25,611 nt of DNA from Octopus sinensis (lineage: Eukaryota). Made by a program: the position numbers and the translations under genes. Within the stretch, counting starts at the first letter, position 1. Every line of letters starts with the position of its first letter. Location of the stretch: the NCBI RefSeq assembly GCF_006345805.1, contig NW_021825600.1, forward strand, positions 1 to 25,611, in the 5' to 3' direction. Shown here one piece after another: positions 14,122 through 24,920 of the stretch. Under the pieces are notes generated by a model. It had not been told where the DNA came from and searched no databases. It worked only from the letters and a program-made list of their open reading frames with translations.

Positions 14122-14207
14122 ACTTTCCTGAAGAGAAGATTGCATTGTTTATACCATTTATTCTTTTGAATAGTATCAGTGGAATTTTCGAAACATGTGT
14201 CGAAAGT
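14122..14207 (+). ncRNA. Type I hammerhead ribozyme HHR-1
   Basis: Stem I ACUUUC(14122-27)/GAAAGU(14202-07). Core CUGAAGA 14128-34. Stem II GAAGAUU(14135-41)/AAUUUUC(14183-89) with G10.1-C11.1. GAAA 14190-93. Stem III ACAUGUGU is self-complementary with G-U pairs. GUC cleavage after 14201. Confidence 0.85.
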
Positions 14208-14253
14208 AAAAATATTTGATTTACACCTGCGTTAAACTCCATTTATTTATTCA

Positions 14254-14447
14254 TATATATATATATATACTACTACTATATATATATATATATATACTAC
14301 TACTATATATATATATATGTGTGTGTGTGTGTGTGTACGTGTGTGTATATGCGTATATGTATATATAATTATATACGTGTAGTTTTGTGTATGTGTATGT
14401 GTACGTATATATGTGTGTATCTGTGTATATATATATATACATATATA
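14254..14447. repeat. Compound (TA)n/(TAC)n/(TG)n microsatellite
   Basis: Directly visible. Confidence 0.95.
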
Positions 14448-14839
14448 CTAGCAGTATCGCCCGGCGTTGCTCGGGTTTGTAAGGGAAATAACTATATAAG
14501 CATTTATAGAGAGTTACTTCCCTTATATAAACCGAGCGAAAATGCATTAAAAATGCGGAAAAATTATGGTAAATTTTTTTTAAATCGTAGACTCATCGTA
14601 GACGCGAGTTACTTCCCTTATATAATAGCAAAAAAATGCATTAAAATGGGAAAAAATTATGGTAATTTTTTTTTTAATTCGTAGACTCATCGTAGACGCG
14701 CGCTAATACCCAGAAGGGCTCGATATGAATCACGACTATAAGATACCCGCTTTAGGTTAAACTGCACCGCAAAATGTGGAGTAGTTAGGAATCTAAATCG
14801 TAGGAGACAGACACACAACTTCACTTTTATATATAAAGA
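14448..14839 (-). mobile_element. Non-autonomous Helitron
   Basis: Minus strand starts 5'-TC TTTATATATAAAAGTGAAGTTGTGTGTCTGTCTCC and ends in the hairpin CCCGAGCAACGCCGGG followed by CTAG-3'. It is inserted between A and T and has a roughly 95-bp internal tandem duplication (14511-14605/14606-14700). Confidence 0.88.
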
Positions 14840-14840
14840 T

Positions 14841-15591
14841 ATACAAAATTTAAAGGATAGACCACTAAAAGTGGACGGTCAACATGCTAGATATAGACGT
14901 CAAATCGGTATTTTCCACAAAGAATATGTTTCTAGCATGTTGACCGTCCACTTTTAGTGGTCAGTCCTTTAAATTTTGTATGTAAAAATATTTGAATCTT
15001 CGGATTTTTTTAATATGTTGGGCCACTGCTTTTAATTGATTAATATCAATTTCTACCCTTATTAAATTTTAAATTAAATAAATATGTTCTCTAACCGGTA
15101 AATTGACTGCTTCTACTTATTAGCTGCAGGGTGGTTTTTCCGATCTCGTCGCGCCAAAGTGAAGGAATTTGAAAGATACACAAAAATATAATCGGTTGAA
15201 CACCATGCATGCGAGACTCCGGTCAAACGTTTTTGCATCTAGTCCTGCAAATTGTATTTTTATATGATAGACCATGCTGACGAGATTGCAGTTTATCCTT
15301 GCAGATATTAACAATCGAAACTGATCGGTACATGGGTAATCATTTTTATTTCGTATATTTTCATTTGTCTTGCTTATTTTTAATGCTTTGGTTTGTGCTG
15401 AGTTTTTATTTGAGAACATATTCTTTGTGGAAAATAGCGAATTGACGTCTATATCTAGCATGTTGACCGTCCACTTTTAGTGGTCAGTCCTTTAAATTTT
15501 GTATGTAAAAATATTTTAATCTTCGGATTTTATTAATATGCTGGGCCACTGGTTTTAATTGATTAATATCAATTTCTACCCTTATTAAATT
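14841..15591 (+). mobile_element. Non-autonomous Penelope-like/retrozyme-like element, 523-bp monomer, with 5' inversion
   Basis: 138-bp direct repeats 14931-15068/15454-15591 (period 523). 14841-14930 is the reverse complement of 15415-15504. One hammerhead lies inside, and the element ends in (TA)n. Confidence 0.8.
15272..15335 (+). ncRNA. Type I hammerhead ribozyme HHR-2
   Basis: Stem I CCAUG(15272-76)/CAUGG(15331-35). CUGACGA 15277-83. Stem II GAUUG(15284-88)/CAAUC(15312-16). GAAA 15317-20. Stem III ACUGAUCGGU is a near-palindrome. GUA cleavage after 15330. Confidence 0.87.
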
Positions 15592-15665
15592 ATATATATA
15601 TATATATATATATATATATATATATATATATATATAATACATGTGTGTGTTTATGTATGTGTGTA
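15591..15665. repeat. (TA)n then (TG)-rich microsatellite
   Basis: Directly visible. Confidence 0.95.
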
Positions 15666-16152
15666 TATGTTGATTGAGGATGACATGGACTGTATAATAA
15701 CACCGGCTTCCAGACTACCACCAGACGCATTTCTATGTGTGAAAGTAGATAAGTATATAGACACACACGTACATACAGACTTTTAGACTTAGAACATGTG
15801 GCTTAAGACTGCCACCAAATTACCATTCGCCCACTACTATATCGCTCCCCACCCCAGATAATTAAAAATAATTTACGACACTCACCACGGCATCAAAACT
15901 CTAACCCATCATCTCTAACCACCATGTATTCTTCTGTATCTCTTTATTTCTATCTCACTTTATCTTTATGTTCACCTTTTTATTTTTTTATTTTTCGTCT
16001 TTATTTTTCGCTTTTTATCTCTTATTTTTTAAATTTTTTATTTTATTTTATCTTTTACCCTTTATTTCTTGTACCTTTTACACTTTCACAATACATTTCT
16101 AGAATTTATGACCCTATACGTGACGTCCTTTGTATCTTTATATACTTATTTC

Positions 16153-22367: not shown

Positions 22368-22406
22368 TATATATATATATATATATATATATATATATAT
22401 ATATAT
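22367..22406. repeat. (TA)n microsatellite
   Basis: Directly visible; separates the CR1-like LINE from the RTE fragment. Confidence 0.98.
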
Positions 22407-22680
22407 GGCTGCCCCCTCGTTATCGAGTATGGCCATTGCACGAAGCTTAACTGTTACTGGTGCTGTGATCGAATGTGACTTTTTAGCTCAGCTAAAGATC
22501 TACAATGTCTTGTACAAAATTGGCAACTAAAACCTTTACTGGTAATAGCCGGCTGTAGTTGTAACTGGGCTTCATGTACCTTTGCACGTCGTTTAGGTCC
22601 TCCTGCCGAATTACACTCTCTTCCATTAAATAATCTATCAGCCTGTTATGAACTATCACTCACCTATTGATCTGCTAACT
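22407..22680 (-). mobile_element. RTE-clade LINE 3' end with terminal C2H2-like finger
   Basis: Minus strand encodes PKRRAKVHEAQLQLQPAITSKGFSCQFCTRHCRSLAELKSHIRSQHQ* (stop 22454-56), like the RTE C-terminal KR..RK...CP.C.R.CRS..GL.SH.R.H motif. A short 3' UTR CTCGATAACGAGGGGGCAGCC and a (TA)n tail follow. Confidence 0.75.
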
Positions 22681-23385
22681 GTATGTATGTACATGCATAG
22701 ATTATTTTTGTATGATGTATAAGGATAATACCCCTTTATATATGTATATGTATTAATGGATGCTTTTGCGCATGTATGTATATGCATGTGCATGTATTTG
22801 GTATCTGTGTGTATATATATGTATGTAGATTTAGACTAAAGTGTCGATTTTCGCTGTATGATATATGAATATAATAGCATTGTATATTGTGACATTGTAT
22901 ATTGTTTTGCATTATTTTATTATATATATATTATATTTATTATATTGAATATATTATATTGAATTAATTAATTTACTGGCGTGTTACACTATAATATTAT
23001 GCTGTATTTTATGTGGTATTTTCCATCTACTATGTATTGTGAATAGCAGAATGCACATATTCTTTTATTGGTATTATTAATAATAATAATAATAATATTA
23101 ATAGTTTTCAGTAATGTAATACAATGAACTTTGGACTTTGTATATGTACACTTTGATGTGGATATATATATATGTATATTCCAGTATATAGATTTGATTA
23201 ACTGTAACCTTATGTGTATGTATATTATTATGTATATACTTATATATATGTATATGTAGGTGTATATACACTTATATGTATATGTATATATGTATATATG
23301 CATATTCTTGTATATATGTACCTTGTTTAATATTCATATTTGCATTTTATATCTTCATTTTATATCTTTTTAATTGTACTTTATA

Positions 23386-23511
23386 ATTTCTGACGAGGCC
23401 TTGAGATATATATATAAGTAACTCATTTTTAACTGCATATTAGCTCAATACATCTGACTAATATGGGCATAATGAGATACTCTTATCTACAGGCTGAAAC
23501 AGCTGTAAGAT
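23386..23511 (+). ncRNA. Type I hammerhead ribozyme HHR-5 (weakened stem I)
   Basis: CUGACGA 23390-96. Stem II GGCCU(23397-401)/AGGCU(23491-95) with G10.1-U11.1, plus AGAUA/UAUCU. GAAA 23496-99. Perfect palindrome ACAGCUGU. GUA cleavage after 23507. Stem I is only AUUU/AGAU (4 bp incl. G-U). Confidence 0.68.
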
Positions 23512-23696
23512 CCATTTTATATGTATTATTCTTATGATATTATCTTACTTATTGATGTATATTGTTTTATTCTGTATTATTCTGTTGGATTTGGATGTTC
23601 CTATTTAATCTAAATAATTAGTTAATAAATTATATGAATCGGTATTATCTAGTAGTTGATGATTGAAAGAAATCTATTCCTCCATTTTCTTATTTT

Positions 23697-23827
23697 GTAT
23701 ATACATATATATATATATATATATATACATATATATATATATAATATATATATATATATATATAATATATATATATATATATATATATATATATATATAT
23801 ATATATTATATATATATATATATATAT
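23697..23827. repeat. (TA)n microsatellite
   Basis: Directly visible. Confidence 0.97.
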
Positions 23828-24920
23828 GGTTATCAGTAATAAAATAGGGTAAAACTAATTAATTTGGAATAATCAATTAATTTCACCAAGTAGATTTCGG
23901 CATGTAAAAGCCTCGTTCGGGGAAAGTTTAAGTAATACTAAGTAATTAAGGGTTTAGCAACGATTTGCCTCACCACACACCGAATTTAGAAATAGCAGTC
24001 AAAGAGTTATAGCTATTCTTACTACTAAAAGGGAGATCTCAGTAAAACCACAGCACTTGAAAGGCAAACACAAACAGGCAAGAGTGAAAGAAATGACAGC
24101 AATCTATCATACAATTTTAAGTCACCTACGGACGTACGTTTCGAGATTAAGTTTTAGGAAAGCATAAGAATTAGATAATTATGTCTTACCCAACTTCTTC
24201 TCTCATCAGCGTAGGACACTACAATTATGAATAATTGTATATTAAATTTCGAGATACTAGAAGGCATCATCTCAACTCAGTATCAGAGCGAGCTAAAACC
24301 GTTACTAGTATCACTAAATTCAAAGTGTGAATGAAAGTTCGTGTCAGCAACCCCTTCCCACCCGCGTGTAGCCAAGACAAGATGTTGCGGTCATTTACTG
24401 GGATGAAATATGGTTATCAGTAATAAAATAGGGTAAAACTAATTAATTTGGAATAATCAATTAATTTCACCAAGTAGATTTCGGCATGTAAAAGCCTCGT
24501 TCGGGGAAAGTTTAAGTAATACTAAGTAATTAAGGGTTTAGCAACGATTTGCCTCACCACACACCGAATTTAGAAATAGCAGTCAAAGAGTTATAGCTAT
24601 TCTTTCTACTAAAAGGGAGATCTCAGTAAAACCACAGCACTTGAAAGGCAAACACAAACAGGCAAGAGAGACATAATTATCTAATTCTTATGCTTTCCTA
24701 AAACTTAATCTCGAAACGTACGTCCGTAGGTGACTTAAAATTGTATCATAGATTGCTGTCATTTCTTTCTCTCTTGCCTATTTGTGTTTGCCTTTCAAGT
24801 GCTGTGGTTTTACTGAGATCTCCCTTTTAGTAGAAAGAATAGCTATAACTCTTTGACTGCTATTTCTAAATTCGGTGTGTGGTGAGGCAAATCGTTGCTA
24901 AACCCTTAATTACTTAGTAT
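23826..24920 (-). mobile_element. Non-autonomous Penelope-like/retrozyme-like element, 584-bp monomer, with 5' inversion
   Basis: About 260-bp direct repeats starting at 23826 and 24410 (period 584). Intact hammerhead on the minus strand. Inverted segment 24672-24920 gives 153-bp inverted arms 24519-24671/24768-24920. (TA)n on both sides. Confidence 0.83.
24125..24215 (-). ncRNA. Type I hammerhead ribozyme HHR-6 (fully canonical)
   Basis: Minus strand: stem I CCUACG(24215-10)/CGUAGG(24130-25). CUGAUGA 24209-03. Stem II GAGA/UCUC plus AAGUU/AACUU. GAAA 24142-39. Perfect palindrome ACGUACGU. GUC cleavage between 24131 and 24130. Confidence 0.9.

What the first reader, a model, noticed from the sequence alone, without database searches (positions are those of the whole stretch)
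14122..24215. Six unrelated type I hammerhead ribozymes in about 10 kb: a dense, diverse ribozyme-retroelement system
Seen: six motifs (14122+, 15272+, 16697+, 18263-, 23386+, 24125-), each with CUGANGA, a paired stem II, GAAA, a self-complementary stem III, a GUC/GUA triplet and a stem I closing around the core. Their stems and flanks show no visible sequence similarity to each other, so the fold is held by fully compensatory sequence. Established: type I hammerheads occur in Penelope-like element pseudo-LTRs and in metazoan retrozymes. Inference: this genome, probably a cephalopod, carries many distinct hammerhead-bearing PLE/retrozyme families at high density that ordinary annotation would leave as unexplained AT-rich DNA. 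I cannot confirm from here whether these particular families are already catalogued.
Basis: partly seen in the sequence, partly recalled or inferred. Interest (0 to 1): 0.92.

Follow-up and report, generated by a model that had tools for sequence, protein, structure and literature searches.

The report
Six hidden hammerhead ribozymes, octopus retroelements
A 10-kb stretch of octopus-like DNA really does hold six unrelated-looking hammerhead ribozyme motifs, each inside a short non-coding retroelement inserted at a (TA)n repeat; they are a long-armed variant of a known kind that standard RNA annotation misses.

Summary
A formal type I hammerhead descriptor finds exactly the six reported sites and nothing else in the window. 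Shuffled sequence gives about 0.017 hits, and 35 kb of real control DNA gives none. Three features the descriptor did not require also agree. All six have a fully self-complementary helix III with C15.2-G16.2, the mark of dimer-dependent Penelope-type hammerheads. Five of six have a significantly stable, long rod-like helix II (33-99 nt). All six point at a (TA)n tract 45-297 nt downstream.

Each motif sits in a different 0.24-0.58 kb non-coding unit. Two families show the composite insertion pattern typical of Penelope-like elements: an inverted 5'-truncated copy, a partial tandem copy, then the full unit, with alternative 3' ends and (TA)n targets. No Penelope RT/GIY-YIG gene is in the window, so the units are most likely non-autonomous.

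Rfam hammerhead models never detect them, even on 100-nt inputs, probably because of the long helix II. The source is an octopus or close relative.

Hammerheads in Penelope elements and their sequence heterogeneity are already published. The long helix II is a new variant as far as I could check. Catalysis and genome-wide abundance are untested.

The parts
14122..14207 (+). H1: type I hammerhead motif. Helix I 6 bp, CUGAAGA, helix II arm 55 nt, GAAA, helix III segment ACAUGUGU, predicted cleavage after C14201.
   Evidence: helix II arm z = -4.0; forcing the HHR fold costs 0.7 kcal/mol over the MFE
15272..15335 (+). H2: hammerhead motif. Helix I 5 bp, CUGACGA, helix II arm 33 nt, helix III ACUGAUCGGU, predicted cleavage after A15330.
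   Evidence: arm z = -0.8; homodimer helix III -12.2 kcal/mol
16697..16795 (+). H3: hammerhead motif. Helix I 7 bp, CUGAAGA, A.C at 10.1/11.1 followed by 6 bp, helix II arm 66 nt, helix III ACAUAUGU, predicted cleavage after A16788.
   Evidence: arm z = -2.7; HHR fold costs 0.5 kcal/mol over the MFE
18266..18335 (-). H4: hammerhead motif. Helix I 3 contiguous bp (2+4 with a UU bulge), CUGAUGA, helix II arm 43 nt, helix III ACCUGCAGGU, predicted cleavage after A18269.
   Evidence: arm z = -2.5; homodimer helix III -17.7 kcal/mol
23386..23511 (+). H5: hammerhead motif and the weakest of the six. Helix I 4 bp, CUGACGA, G.U at 10.1/11.1, helix II arm 99 nt, helix III ACAGCUGU, predicted cleavage after A23507.
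   Evidence: arm z = -3.5; HHR fold costs 6.8 kcal/mol over the MFE
24125..24215 (-). H6: hammerhead motif. Helix I 6 bp (9 with a bulge), CUGAUGA, helix II arm 60 nt, helix III ACGUACGU, predicted cleavage after C24131.
   Evidence: arm z = -2.8; HHR fold costs 2.2 kcal/mol over the MFE
14012..14253 (+). Unit U1 (about 242 nt, non-coding) carrying H1. TA tracts on both sides; type B 3' terminus ...CUCCAUUUAUUUAUUCA.
15086..15590 (+). Unit U2 (about 505 nt, repeat period 523) carrying H2 186 nt from its 5' end. Type A 3' terminus ...CUACCCUUAUUAAAU followed by (TA)23.
14841..15085 (.). H2-family composite. An inverted 5'-truncated copy (14930->14841, unit positions 330-419) lies head-to-head with a direct 5'-truncated copy (14931-15085, positions 369-524). 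The direct copy abuts the 5' end of U2, like a pseudo-LTR.
16433..16903 (+). Unit U3 (about 470 nt) carrying H3. Type A terminus ...UUCACCCUGAAUUUAUUGUACCUAAA followed by a long (TA)n.
10220..10336 (-). Old H3-family paralogue (about 80% identity). It is 5'-truncated inside helix II, lacks CUGANGA, and its cleavage site is destroyed (GAAACAUAUACGAUAC).
18072..18423 (-). Unit U4 (about 352 nt) carrying H4. It lies between the LINE tail's (TA)8 and the (TA)n at 18016-18071. Type B terminus ...GCCAUUUAUUUACUAAUUUG.
23330..23705 (+). Unit U5 (about 376 nt) carrying H5. Type B terminus ...CUCCAUUUUCUUAUUUUG followed by (TA)n. It meets U6 tail-to-tail on the same tract.
23828..24407 (-). Unit U6 (580 nt, repeat period 584) carrying H6 at unit positions 193-283. 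Type A terminus ...UUUUACCCUAUUUUAUUACUGAUAACC followed by (TA)n.
24412..24920 (.). H6-family composite. An upstream partial tandem copy (24671->24412, unit positions 321-580) abuts the 5' end of U6. An inverted 5'-truncated copy (24669-24920, positions 222-473) ends at the alternative 3' end ...AAACCCUUAAUUACUUAG followed by (TA)n.
17532..18012 (.). Second H6-family insertion. An inverted copy (17648->17532, positions 361-477) lies head-to-head with a direct copy (17651-18012, positions 215-578). The direct copy keeps only the ribozyme's 3' half (GAAACGUACGUC + helix I 3' strand).
10905..11217 (+). Seventh family. An element with an orphan hammerhead 3' half (GAAACAAUUGUC at 10926) that begins about 21 nt upstream of GAAA. 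Type A terminus ...CUCACCCUUAUUAA followed by (TA)n.
23706..23827 (.). (TA)n target tract shared tail-to-tail by U5 and U6. Equivalent tracts lie at 14254-14318, 15591-15636, 16904-17172, 18016-18071 and 24918-24992.

Best explanation
The six motifs are genuine type I hammerhead ribozyme motifs of the dimer-dependent, Penelope-element type. Each is carried by a different short (0.24-0.58 kb) non-coding retroelement family that integrated at (TA)n microsatellites in an octopod genome.

Proposed mechanism, step by step:
1. A unit is transcribed, either by read-through or from an upstream partial copy acting as a pseudo-LTR (inferred).
2. One ribozyme alone cannot close helix III, because that segment is a 6-10 nt palindrome with no loop. 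Two copies of the same family pair through the palindrome to build an extended helix III and two active sites (inferred from sequence and from published behaviour of such hammerheads).
3. Cleavage falls 3' of GUC or GUA and separates upstream read-through RNA from the element body (not tested).
4. The RNA is copied by a reverse transcriptase/GIY-YIG endonuclease supplied in trans by an autonomous Penelope-like element. That enzyme recognises the conserved 3' terminus (type A ...ACCCU-N0-3-UUAU..., type B ...CCAUUUAUUUA...) and primes at a nick in (TA)n. The insertion footprints are shown; the enzyme is inferred.

The ribozymes differ from published Penelope hammerheads in one respect. Helix II is a long, imperfect rod of 33-99 nt rather than 4-8 bp. 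This is the likely reason covariance models and standard descriptors miss them.
For: Motif reality:
- 6 hits against 0.0165 expected, and 0 in 35 kb of real control DNA.
- All complete motifs have a perfect core, and there are no single-mismatch or U3-A8 variants.

Features the descriptor did not select for:
- 6/6 have a fully self-complementary helix III beginning AC and ending GU, with homodimer duplexes of -6 to -17.7 kcal/mol.
- 5/6 helix II arms are more stable than their shuffles, z = -2.5 to -4.0, and fold as single hairpins.
- The unconstrained MFE recovers helices I and II for H1, H3 and H6, and helix II for H5.
- 6/6 have (TA)>=6 within 45-297 nt downstream, against a background of 0.26 per site.

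Retroelement context:
- The H6 and H2 families show an inverted 5'-truncated copy, then a partial tandem copy, then the full unit, bounded by TA tracts. This is the arrangement Craig et al. 2021 (PMC8557442) describe as typical of PLEs.
- H6-family copies use two alternative 3' ends, each just after an ACCCU..UUA motif. This resembles the PLE 'tail' signature explained by two RT start sites in PMC11167929.
- Type A termini are enriched at (TA)n-abutting ends, 5/52 against 0.8 expected.
- The units are non-coding. There is no RT or GIY-YIG in 12-18.4 or 22.4-25.6 kb.

Published background:
- PLE hammerheads are type I with a palindromic helix III, vary extremely within a genome, and often occur as nearby pairs on opposite strands (PMC4209133).
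- Some PLE clades prefer (TA)n targets (Naiads; suggested for Neptune), and Octopus spp. are among the cephalopods that carry Naiad families (PMC8557442).
- Octopus vulgaris has about 30 recently active Penelope families (PMC13282606).
Against: - No Rfam hammerhead model scores these motifs at all.
- No cleavage data exist. Published PLE hammerheads cleave poorly in vitro even as dimers (PMC4209133). For an Anolis PLE, ribozyme activity was dispensable for insertion and no RNA ends mapped to the cleavage site (PMC11167929).
- No autonomous PLE with matching termini was found, so the partner is inferred from footprints only.
- None of the five 5'-truncated H6- and H2-family copies mapped here starts at the predicted cleavage site.
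- Some individual motifs have non-ideal features: H3 has A.C at 10.1/11.1, H5 has G.U there and a weak helix I, and H4 has a short helix I.
- The 'tail' here is about 100 nt, against 30-40 nt in the literature.
- A tRNA-derived SINE in the window shares the type A terminus. That would equally suit a LINE partner.
- No paralogues from outside the window could be retrieved, so there is no within-family covariation test.
Confidence: 0.72

Rival explanations
1. The motifs are real hammerheads, but the 'units' are only heavily 5'-truncated 3' ends (pseudo-LTR/3'-UTR parts) of ordinary autonomous Penelope-like elements. On this view they are not dedicated non-autonomous families.
For: PLE insertions are mostly 5'-truncated, and their hammerheads lie in the pLTR near the 3' end (PMC8557442, PMC4209133). 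The window shows many truncated copies. There is no outside evidence for the true full length of any family.
Against: In both families with composite structure, the unit's 5' end abuts the 3' end of the upstream partial copy. That is the position held by a full-length copy in PLE partial tandems. It lies at nearly the same distance upstream of the ribozyme in both (186 and 192 nt). Four other units are bounded by TA tracts on both sides within 242-471 nt. No RT or GIY-YIG remnant lies upstream of any of the six.
Confidence: 0.17
2. The units are SINE-like elements mobilised by a LINE through a shared 3' tail, with a hammerhead used for processing, as in the Schistosoma Sm-alpha/Sj-alpha elements. 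They would then not be Penelope-dependent.
For: A tRNA-derived SINE (17183-17528) ends in the same type A terminus ...UUUACCCUUUAU plus TA. A LINE with APE endonuclease and RT is present in the window. Octopus genomes hold hundreds of unclassified SINE families (PMC13282606).
Against: The six units have no pol III A or B boxes, whereas the SINE positive control has both. The LINE in the window ends in (TAAGGATT)3(TA)8, a different terminus. In the head-to-head pairs the inverted and direct copies overlap in content (for example positions 361-477 and 215-578), which twin priming by a LINE would not be expected to give (my own knowledge of LINE insertion, not tested here). Partial tandems and alternative 3' ends are PLE signatures (PMC8557442, PMC11167929).
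Confidence: 0.09
3. The motifs are chance matches in AT-rich, repeat-rich DNA and have no ribozyme ancestry.
For: Rfam covariance models do not recognise them. A long, variable spacer between the two core boxes makes a descriptor permissive. Perreault et al. 2011 (PMC3088659) warn that consensus-conforming sequences arise by chance in large databases.
Against: There are 6 observed against 0.0165 expected in 2000 shuffles, and 0 in 35 kb of real control sequence. Unselected features agree in all or nearly all six: the full helix III palindrome, C15.2-G16.2, stable helix II arms, orientation towards (TA)n, and placement inside retroelement units.
Confidence: 0.01

Closest known systems
Hammerhead ribozymes of Penelope-like elements ('min-HHR'/PLE-HHR; Cervera & de la Pena 2014, PMC4209133; Lunse, Weinberg & Breaker 2017, known to me only through the review PMC6765202)
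   Same: Type I topology with a canonical core. Helix III is reduced to a short palindrome that can only form between two copies. Sequence heterogeneity between families within one genome is extreme. Motifs often lie 100-700 bp apart on opposite strands. They are associated with truncated, tandem or inverted retroelement copies.
   Different: Published PLE hammerheads have a helix II of about 6-8 bp and were found with compact descriptors. Here helix II is a 33-99 nt rod. Published ones sit in pLTRs of ORF-bearing elements, but no RT/GIY-YIG ORF accompanies these. The conserved extra nucleotide between A9 and 10.1 is not generally present.
Metazoan non-LTR retrozymes (Cervera & de la Pena 2020, PMC7229834; Li, Clavereau & Pollet 2026, bioRxiv 10.64898/2026.07.22.740005)
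   Same: Short, AT-rich, non-coding units carrying a type I hammerhead. They are probably mobilised in trans by PLEs, and some vertebrate examples need dimers.
   Different: Retrozymes are full tandem arrays of 150-450 bp monomers, each with a compact canonical hammerhead, and are expressed as circRNAs. Here there are single units or partial tandems with one ribozyme each, units up to 580 nt, and a long helix II. Only 3 of 6 units are unusually self-paired. circRNA formation is untested.
Naiad and Neptune Penelope-like elements with a (TA)n insertion bias (Craig et al. 2021, PMC8557442)
   Same: (TA)n targets, heavy 5' truncation, partial tandems, and an inverted 5'-truncated copy at the 5' side. 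Naiad families are reported in Octopus spp. and other cephalopods. Craig et al. also record 'HHR_half_core' cases in Naiads where CUGANGA and GAAA lie 35-50 nt apart, similar to the 33-99 nt spacing here.
   Different: Naiads are reported to lack canonical hammerheads, and their half-core cases were not shown to fold as ribozymes. No Naiad or Neptune coding sequence is in this window, so a link is only a hypothesis.
Rfam Hammerhead_1 (RF00163) and the other Rfam hammerhead families
   Same: The same catalytic core and three-helix junction. Canonical members occur in cephalopods, for example 235 hits in the giant squid genome (PMC6962438).
   Different: None of the six reaches even E<=10 against any Rfam hammerhead model, on the whole window or on 100-nt inputs.
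Schistosoma Sm-alpha/Sj-alpha SINE-like elements with hammerheads (reviewed in PMC6765202)
   Same: Short non-autonomous retroposons carrying a type I hammerhead.
   Different: Those have a pol III promoter and a compact ribozyme. These units have no A or B boxes and show Penelope-type insertion footprints.

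Membership tests
Hammerhead ribozyme, type I | Conserved core: C3 U4 G5 A6 N7 G8 A9 ... G12 A13 A14 ... A15.1-U16.1, H17 not G | tested here: met
   All six have a perfect core. N7 = A, C, A, U, C, U and H17 = C, A, A, A, A, C. There are no complete motifs with mismatched cores.
Hammerhead ribozyme, type I | Three helices meeting at the core, with helix I open-ended | tested here: met
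   Helix I has 3-7 contiguous bp. Helix II has 4-7 bp at the junction and extends into long hairpins. Helix III can form only between two copies.
Hammerhead ribozyme, type I | Recognition by curated covariance models (Rfam hammerhead families) | tested here: not met
   No hammerhead hit at gathering score, at E<=10 on the window, or on 96-101 nt inputs for H2 and H4.
Hammerhead ribozyme, type I | Site-specific self-cleavage 3' of H17 | not testable with these tools
   Needs in vitro transcription and cleavage assays. Predicted sites are given in the parts list.
Hammerhead ribozyme, type I | Tertiary contact between helix I and helix II loops, needed for fast cleavage | not tested
   Helix II has internal loops or bulges 4-7 bp from the core, but no contact was modelled.
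PLE-associated dimeric hammerheads | Very short helix III with a palindromic sequence, so that activity requires a dimer | tested here: met
   6/6 segments are fully self-complementary (ACAUGUGU, ACUGAUCGGU, ACAUAUGU, ACCUGCAGGU, ACAGCUGU, ACGUACGU), with homodimer duplexes of -6 to -17.7 kcal/mol.
PLE-associated dimeric hammerheads | Compact helix II of about 6-8 bp (PMC4209133) | tested here: not met
   The spacing between CUGANGA and GAAA is 33, 43, 55, 60, 66 and 99 nt.
PLE-associated dimeric hammerheads | Location in the pseudo-LTR of an element encoding RT + GIY-YIG | tested here: not met
   Pfam scans of all stop-free stretches of at least 45 aa (low-complexity ones left out) in 12-18.4 and 22.4-25.6 kb, and of the larger ORFs, find only a LINE (Exo_endo_phos_2 + RVT_1). 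An autonomous partner may lie elsewhere in the genome.
Penelope-like element insertion signature | Frequent 5' truncation, and a partial tandem in which a truncated copy precedes a full unit | tested here: met
   H6 family: 24671->24412 (positions 321-580) abuts U6. H2 family: 14931-15085 (positions 369-524) abuts U2. Other copies are truncated at positions 215, 222, 361 and 330.
Penelope-like element insertion signature | An inverted 5'-truncated copy directly adjoining the 5' side | tested here: met
   Three head-to-head junctions: 14930/14931, 17648/17651 and 24669-24671.
Penelope-like element insertion signature | Optional 'tail', meaning two alternative 3' ends that reflect two RT start sites (PMC11167929) | tested here: inconclusive
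   H6-family copies end either at about position 473-482 or at 580, in both cases next to TA tracts. However, the difference is about 100 nt rather than 30-40 nt, and only 5 copies were seen.
Penelope-like element insertion signature | Microsatellite, (TA)n, target preference (Naiad; suggested for Neptune) | tested here: met
   All six units and the truncated copies end at TA tracts. 6/6 motifs have (TA)>=6 within 300 nt downstream, against a background of 0.26.
Metazoan non-LTR retrozymes | Tandem arrays of 150-450 bp monomers, each with its own hammerhead | tested here: not met
   Only partial tandems occur, with one complete ribozyme per cluster. Repeat periods are 523 and 584 nt.
Metazoan non-LTR retrozymes | Expression as self-cleaved linear and circular RNAs | not testable with these tools
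   No transcriptome data are available here.
SINE-like hammerhead elements (Sm-alpha type) | Internal pol III promoter (A and B boxes) | tested here: not met
   No A or B box in any of the six units. The tRNA-derived SINE at 17183-17528 used as a positive control has both.

The most novel reading that the evidence does not exclude
Long-helix-II, dimer-dependent hammerheads may form a widespread but so far unrecognised structural class. They could be the 'missing' ribozyme of (TA)n-targeting Penelope-like clades such as Naiads, which are reported to lack canonical hammerheads but to carry 'half cores' 35-50 nt apart, and of their many non-autonomous derivatives. Each family's distinct helix III palindrome would then act as a family-specific dimerisation address. 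The clustering of 5' truncation points just inside helix II would reflect the folded ribozyme acting as a roadblock or template-switch point for the reverse transcriptase.
Probability: 0.25. Interest if true: 0.7.

Novelty: new variant of a known kind. Interest (0 to 1): 0.5.

Why it matters
Hammerheads are an established companion of Penelope-like retroelements, yet their role there is unresolved, and one very abundant clade (Naiads) appears to lack them. If ribozymes with a 30-100 nt helix II are common, current counts are underestimates, because they rest on compact descriptors and Rfam models. Part of the 'unclassified SINE/unknown repeat' fraction of cephalopod and other invertebrate genomes could then be assigned to Penelope-dependent, ribozyme-bearing elements. 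The window also offers seven independent sequence solutions to the same fold. That makes it a compact natural test set for how much helix II length a dimeric hammerhead tolerates.

Tried and rejected
- Rfam cmscan at gathering score, at E<=10 on the whole window, and on 96-101 nt inputs. No hammerhead hit; the only hits were microsatellite-driven miRNA look-alikes.
- Retrieving paralogues from outside the window, by three routes. An exact look-up of the LINE ORF found nothing on record. A protein search with a stop-free reverse-strand translation of the H6 family found nothing. An exact-pattern scan of metagenome contigs gave four chance matches in unrelated DNA. As a result, no within-family covariation test was possible.
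- A search for Penelope RT/GIY-YIG remnants around the motifs. None found.
- Core variants: the U3-A8 covariant core, any single mismatch in CUGANGA, and GAAA variants. No extra motifs.
- A whole-unit rod-like structure as in retrozyme circRNAs. Only 3 of 6 units are more stable than shuffles, so this was not used as evidence.
- H4 as part of the LINE 3' UTR. Rejected, because the LINE ends in (TAAGGATT)3(TA)8 at about 18424-18460, upstream of the unit.
- ARAGORN found no tRNA genes.
- Uniform high density in octopus DNA. Not supported: 0 hits in a 21.5 kb O. sinensis locus and 0 in the first 14 kb of the window.
- The Lunse et al. 2017 paper and the supplement of Craig et al. 2021 are not held in the library. 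I therefore could not check whether long-helix-II variants are tabulated there.

Full report
OBSERVATION. I read all six sites. I wrote this down as a formal type I descriptor: helix I >=3 bp, helix II >=3 bp with 10-110 nt between the boxes, and only two pairs required in helix III. On both strands of the window it returned exactly six hits and no others: + 14122-14207, + 15272-15335, + 16697-16795, - 18266-18335, + 23386-23511 and - 24125-24215. In 2000 block-wise dinucleotide-preserving shuffles the mean was 0.0165 hits per window (maximum 2). It was 0.003 at stems >=4 bp, where 5 are observed, and 0.002 when a complete helix III palindrome was demanded, where 6 are observed. Real DNA gave zero hits: the first 14 kb of the window and a 21.5 kb Octopus sinensis locus. 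The descriptor was written after I had seen the sites, but an excess of more than 300-fold cannot come from that.

INDEPENDENT SUPPORT. Four properties were not imposed by the descriptor.
(i) All six A15.1...U16.1 segments are fully self-complementary, beginning AC and ending GU: ACAUGUGU, ACUGAUCGGU, ACAUAUGU, ACCUGCAGGU, ACAGCUGU, ACGUACGU. They cannot close as hairpins but form homodimer duplexes of -6 to -17.7 kcal/mol. This is the published signature of animal and Penelope-type hammerheads that act as dimers (PMC4209133, PMC6765202).
(ii) The sequence between CUGANGA and GAAA is long (33, 43, 55, 60, 66 and 99 nt). In five of six cases it folds into one imperfect hairpin that is significantly more stable than its dinucleotide shuffles (z = -2.5 to -4.0; H2 is -0.8). 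Forcing the hammerhead topology costs only 0.5-2.2 kcal/mol over the MFE for H1, H3 and H6, and 3.7-6.8 for H2, H4 and H5.
(iii) Every complete motif has a perfect core. There are no single-mismatch, U3-A8 or GAAA-variant versions.
(iv) All six point towards a (TA)>=6 tract 45-297 nt downstream on their own strand, where the background is 0.26 per site, giving about 3e-4 for six of six.

WHY ANNOTATION MISSES THEM. Rfam release 15 gives no hammerhead hit at gathering score or at E<=10 on the window. It also gives none when handed only about 100 nt around H2 or H4, the two with the shortest helix II. The weak Rfam hits in the window are microsatellite look-alikes of miRNA families.

CONTEXT. 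The window is AT-rich and full of (TA)n and (TG)n tracts. A frameshifted LINE (Exo_endo_phos_2 + RVT_1) lies on the minus strand from about 22.6 to 18.44 kb and ends in (TAAGGATT)3(TA)8. Its best relative is an Octopus sinensis protein at 54% identity. Other repeats in the window are 80-92% identical to that O. sinensis locus. The source is therefore an octopus or a close relative. No RT or GIY-YIG signal is found outside the LINE in 12-25.6 kb.

THE UNITS. Each motif lies in a separate non-coding unit bounded by TA tracts or by another copy: U1 14012-14253, U2 15086-15590, U3 16433-16903, U4 18423-18072 (minus), U5 23330-23705, U6 24407-23828 (minus). The units share no BLAST-detectable similarity, and the helix II arms are no more alike than shuffles. 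The exception is the last 15-30 nt before the TA tract, which fall into two types. Type A is ...(U/C)ACCCU-N0-3-UUAU.... It occurs in H2, H3 and the H6 family, in elements without a complete hammerhead that end at 11217, 16065 and 16407, and in a tRNA-derived SINE at 17183-17528. Type B is ...CCAUUU(A/U)UUUA... and occurs in H1, H4 and H5. ACCCT occurs in the last 30 nt of 5 of 52 (TA)n-abutting ends, against 0.8 expected.

INSERTION ARCHITECTURE. Self-BLAST shows that the H6 family has five copies. Numbering the unit 1-580 on the minus strand from 24407, with the ribozyme at 193-283, they are:
- the full unit;
- an upstream copy covering 321-580 that abuts the unit's 5' end (24671->24412), a partial tandem with period 584;
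- an inverted copy covering 222-473 head-to-head with that one (24669-24920);
- a second locus with a direct copy covering 215-578 (17651-18012);
- at that locus, a head-to-head inverted copy covering 361-477 (17648->17532).
The H2 family repeats the pattern: an inverted copy covering 330-419 (14930->14841), a direct copy covering 369-524 (14931-15085), then the full unit, with period 523. Craig et al. 2021 (PMC8557442) describe this arrangement as typical of Penelope-like elements: heavy 5' truncation, partial tandems forming pseudo-LTRs, an inverted 5'-truncated copy adjoining the 5' side, and in some clades a (TA)n target bias. Both inverted H6-family copies stop 7-14 nt after AAACCCUUAAUU, directly at TA tracts, whereas the direct copies run about 100 nt further to UUUUACCCUAUUUUAUUACUGAUAACC plus (TA)n. 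Two alternative 3' ends recall the PLE 'tail' signature, which Frangieh et al. 2024 (PMC11167929) explained by two internal RT start sites. Here the difference is about 100 nt rather than 30-40 nt, so I rate this point as inconclusive. U5 and U6 meet tail-to-tail on one (TA)n tract, as do U4 and the 17651-18012 copy. That fits repeated targeting of the same microsatellites.

DEFECTIVE COPIES. Searching for hammerhead 3' halves (GAAAC + palindrome + H) finds ten sites. Six are the complete motifs. Two are truncated H6-family copies. Two lie in a seventh family on the plus strand between 10905 and 11217 (GAAACAAUUGUC at 10926; type A terminus). An old H3-family paralogue (10336->10220, about 80% identity) has lost its GUA site. 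Four truncated copies begin within helix II: H6-family positions 215 and 222, the H3 paralogue, and the element starting at 10905. None starts at the predicted cleavage site. The clustering is unexplained. A folded ribozyme acting as an RT roadblock is a guess.

INTERPRETATION. The best reading is that these are genuine hammerhead motifs of the Penelope/dimer type, carried by several different short non-autonomous retroelement families. Those families would be mobilised in trans by a Penelope-like RT/GIY-YIG enzyme that targets (TA)n and recognises the conserved 3' termini. Shown here: the motifs, their statistical reality, their structural consistency, the non-coding units, and the PLE-type footprints. 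Inferred: transcription, dimer-dependent cleavage, and the identity of the partner enzyme.

Against over-reading, published PLE hammerheads cleave poorly in vitro (PMC4209133). In an Anolis PLE, ribozyme activity was dispensable for insertion and no RNA ends mapped to the cleavage site (PMC11167929).

Rivals. The units may be merely truncated ends of autonomous PLEs. That is less likely, because both composite clusters place the unit's 5' end at the junction with the upstream copy, 186 and 192 nt before the ribozyme. They may be LINE-dependent SINE-like elements. The SINE sharing the type A terminus supports this, but the units lack pol III boxes and carry PLE-type footprints. Chance is effectively excluded.

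COMPARISON AND NOVELTY. Already published: type I hammerheads in PLE pseudo-LTRs, their palindromic helix III, their extreme heterogeneity within a genome, nearby pairs on opposite strands, non-autonomous hammerhead elements (retrozymes) probably derived from PLEs, PLEs in octopus, and canonical hammerheads in cephalopods (PMC4209133, PMC7229834, bioRxiv 10.64898/2026.07.22.740005, PMC8557442, PMC13282606, PMC6962438). What I did not find described is a helix II of 33-99 nt. The nearest mention is the 'HHR_half_core' note for Naiads, with core halves 35-50 nt apart and no fold assigned (PMC8557442). I could not consult Lunse et al. 2017, the Craig et al. supplement, Dfam or Repbase. The elements are not strict retrozymes, because there are no full tandem arrays and only 3 of 6 units are unusually structured. 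They are also not canonical PLE hammerheads, because of the helix II length and the absence of an ORF. I therefore classify the finding as a new variant of a known kind, of moderate interest. It would become more interesting if a genome-wide scan shows the class is common and linked to PLE clades thought to lack ribozymes.

LIMITS. There is no cleavage assay. There are no paralogues from outside the window, so no within-family covariation test. No TE-library comparison was possible. Density has been sampled in only about 47 kb of octopod DNA.

Noticed in passing
window 17183-17528 (+): A tRNA-derived SINE with A box TGGCTCAGTGG and a B-like box AGCTCGAATCC. It ends in ...UUUACCCUUUAU plus a short TA tract, the same type A terminus as three hammerhead-bearing families. 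It may therefore share their reverse-transcriptase partner. ARAGORN does not call it a tRNA.
   Followed up: partly
window ~18440-22650 (-): A degraded non-LTR retrotransposon with an APE-type endonuclease (20064-21233) and RVT_1 (19568-20098 and 18743-19462) split by frameshifts. There is a weak C2H2 zinc-finger match at 22457-22645, just upstream of it on the same strand and possibly part of its 5' region. Its tail is (TAAGGATT)3(TA)8 at about 18424-18460. The best relative is Octopus sinensis LOC118768055 at 54% identity.
   Followed up: partly
window 17651, 24669, ~10336 (-) and ~10905: Four independent 5'-truncated hammerhead-element copies begin inside helix II. Three start 21-30 nt after the start of helix I and one about 21 nt before GAAA. 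None begins at the predicted cleavage site. This looks non-random but rests on few copies.
   Followed up: partly
window 7594-8560 and 16153-16399; also 1470-1546: A family of about 180-280 nt repeats, tandemly arranged at 7.6-8.6 kb, with a further copy at 16153-16399 just upstream of unit U3. That copy ends in ...UUACCCUUUAU (16407), and a separate ...UUUACCCUUUAU end lies at 16065. The family is about 90% identical to a segment of the O. sinensis locus L001 (10438-10631). No hammerhead halves were found in it.
   Followed up: partly
window 4934-5445 and 13620-13924: Two further interspersed repeats are shared with the O. sinensis control locus. The first has several copies there at 78-91% identity and the second matches at 78-82%. 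They were not classified.
   Followed up: no
window 2600-3360, 6510-6960, 10380-10900, 14260-14460, 22358-22414: (TA)n, (TG)n and (TATG)n microsatellites produce dozens of sub-threshold Rfam matches to miRNA families (mir-297, mir-3149, mir-568, mir-466 and others) with E-values down to 1e-6. These are low-complexity artefacts, not miRNA genes.
   Followed up: yes
window 14539-14711 and 13816-13924: Two short local tandem duplications (79 nt x2 at 77% identity; 42 nt x2 at 76%) lie just upstream and downstream of unit U1. Their origin is unknown.
   Followed up: no
window 23828-24407 (unit U6) and 18072-18423 (unit U4): These two whole units are much more self-paired than their shuffles (z = -6.9 and -3.7), while U2, U3 and U5 are not. 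Unit-wide structure is therefore family-specific and not a shared property.
   Followed up: partly
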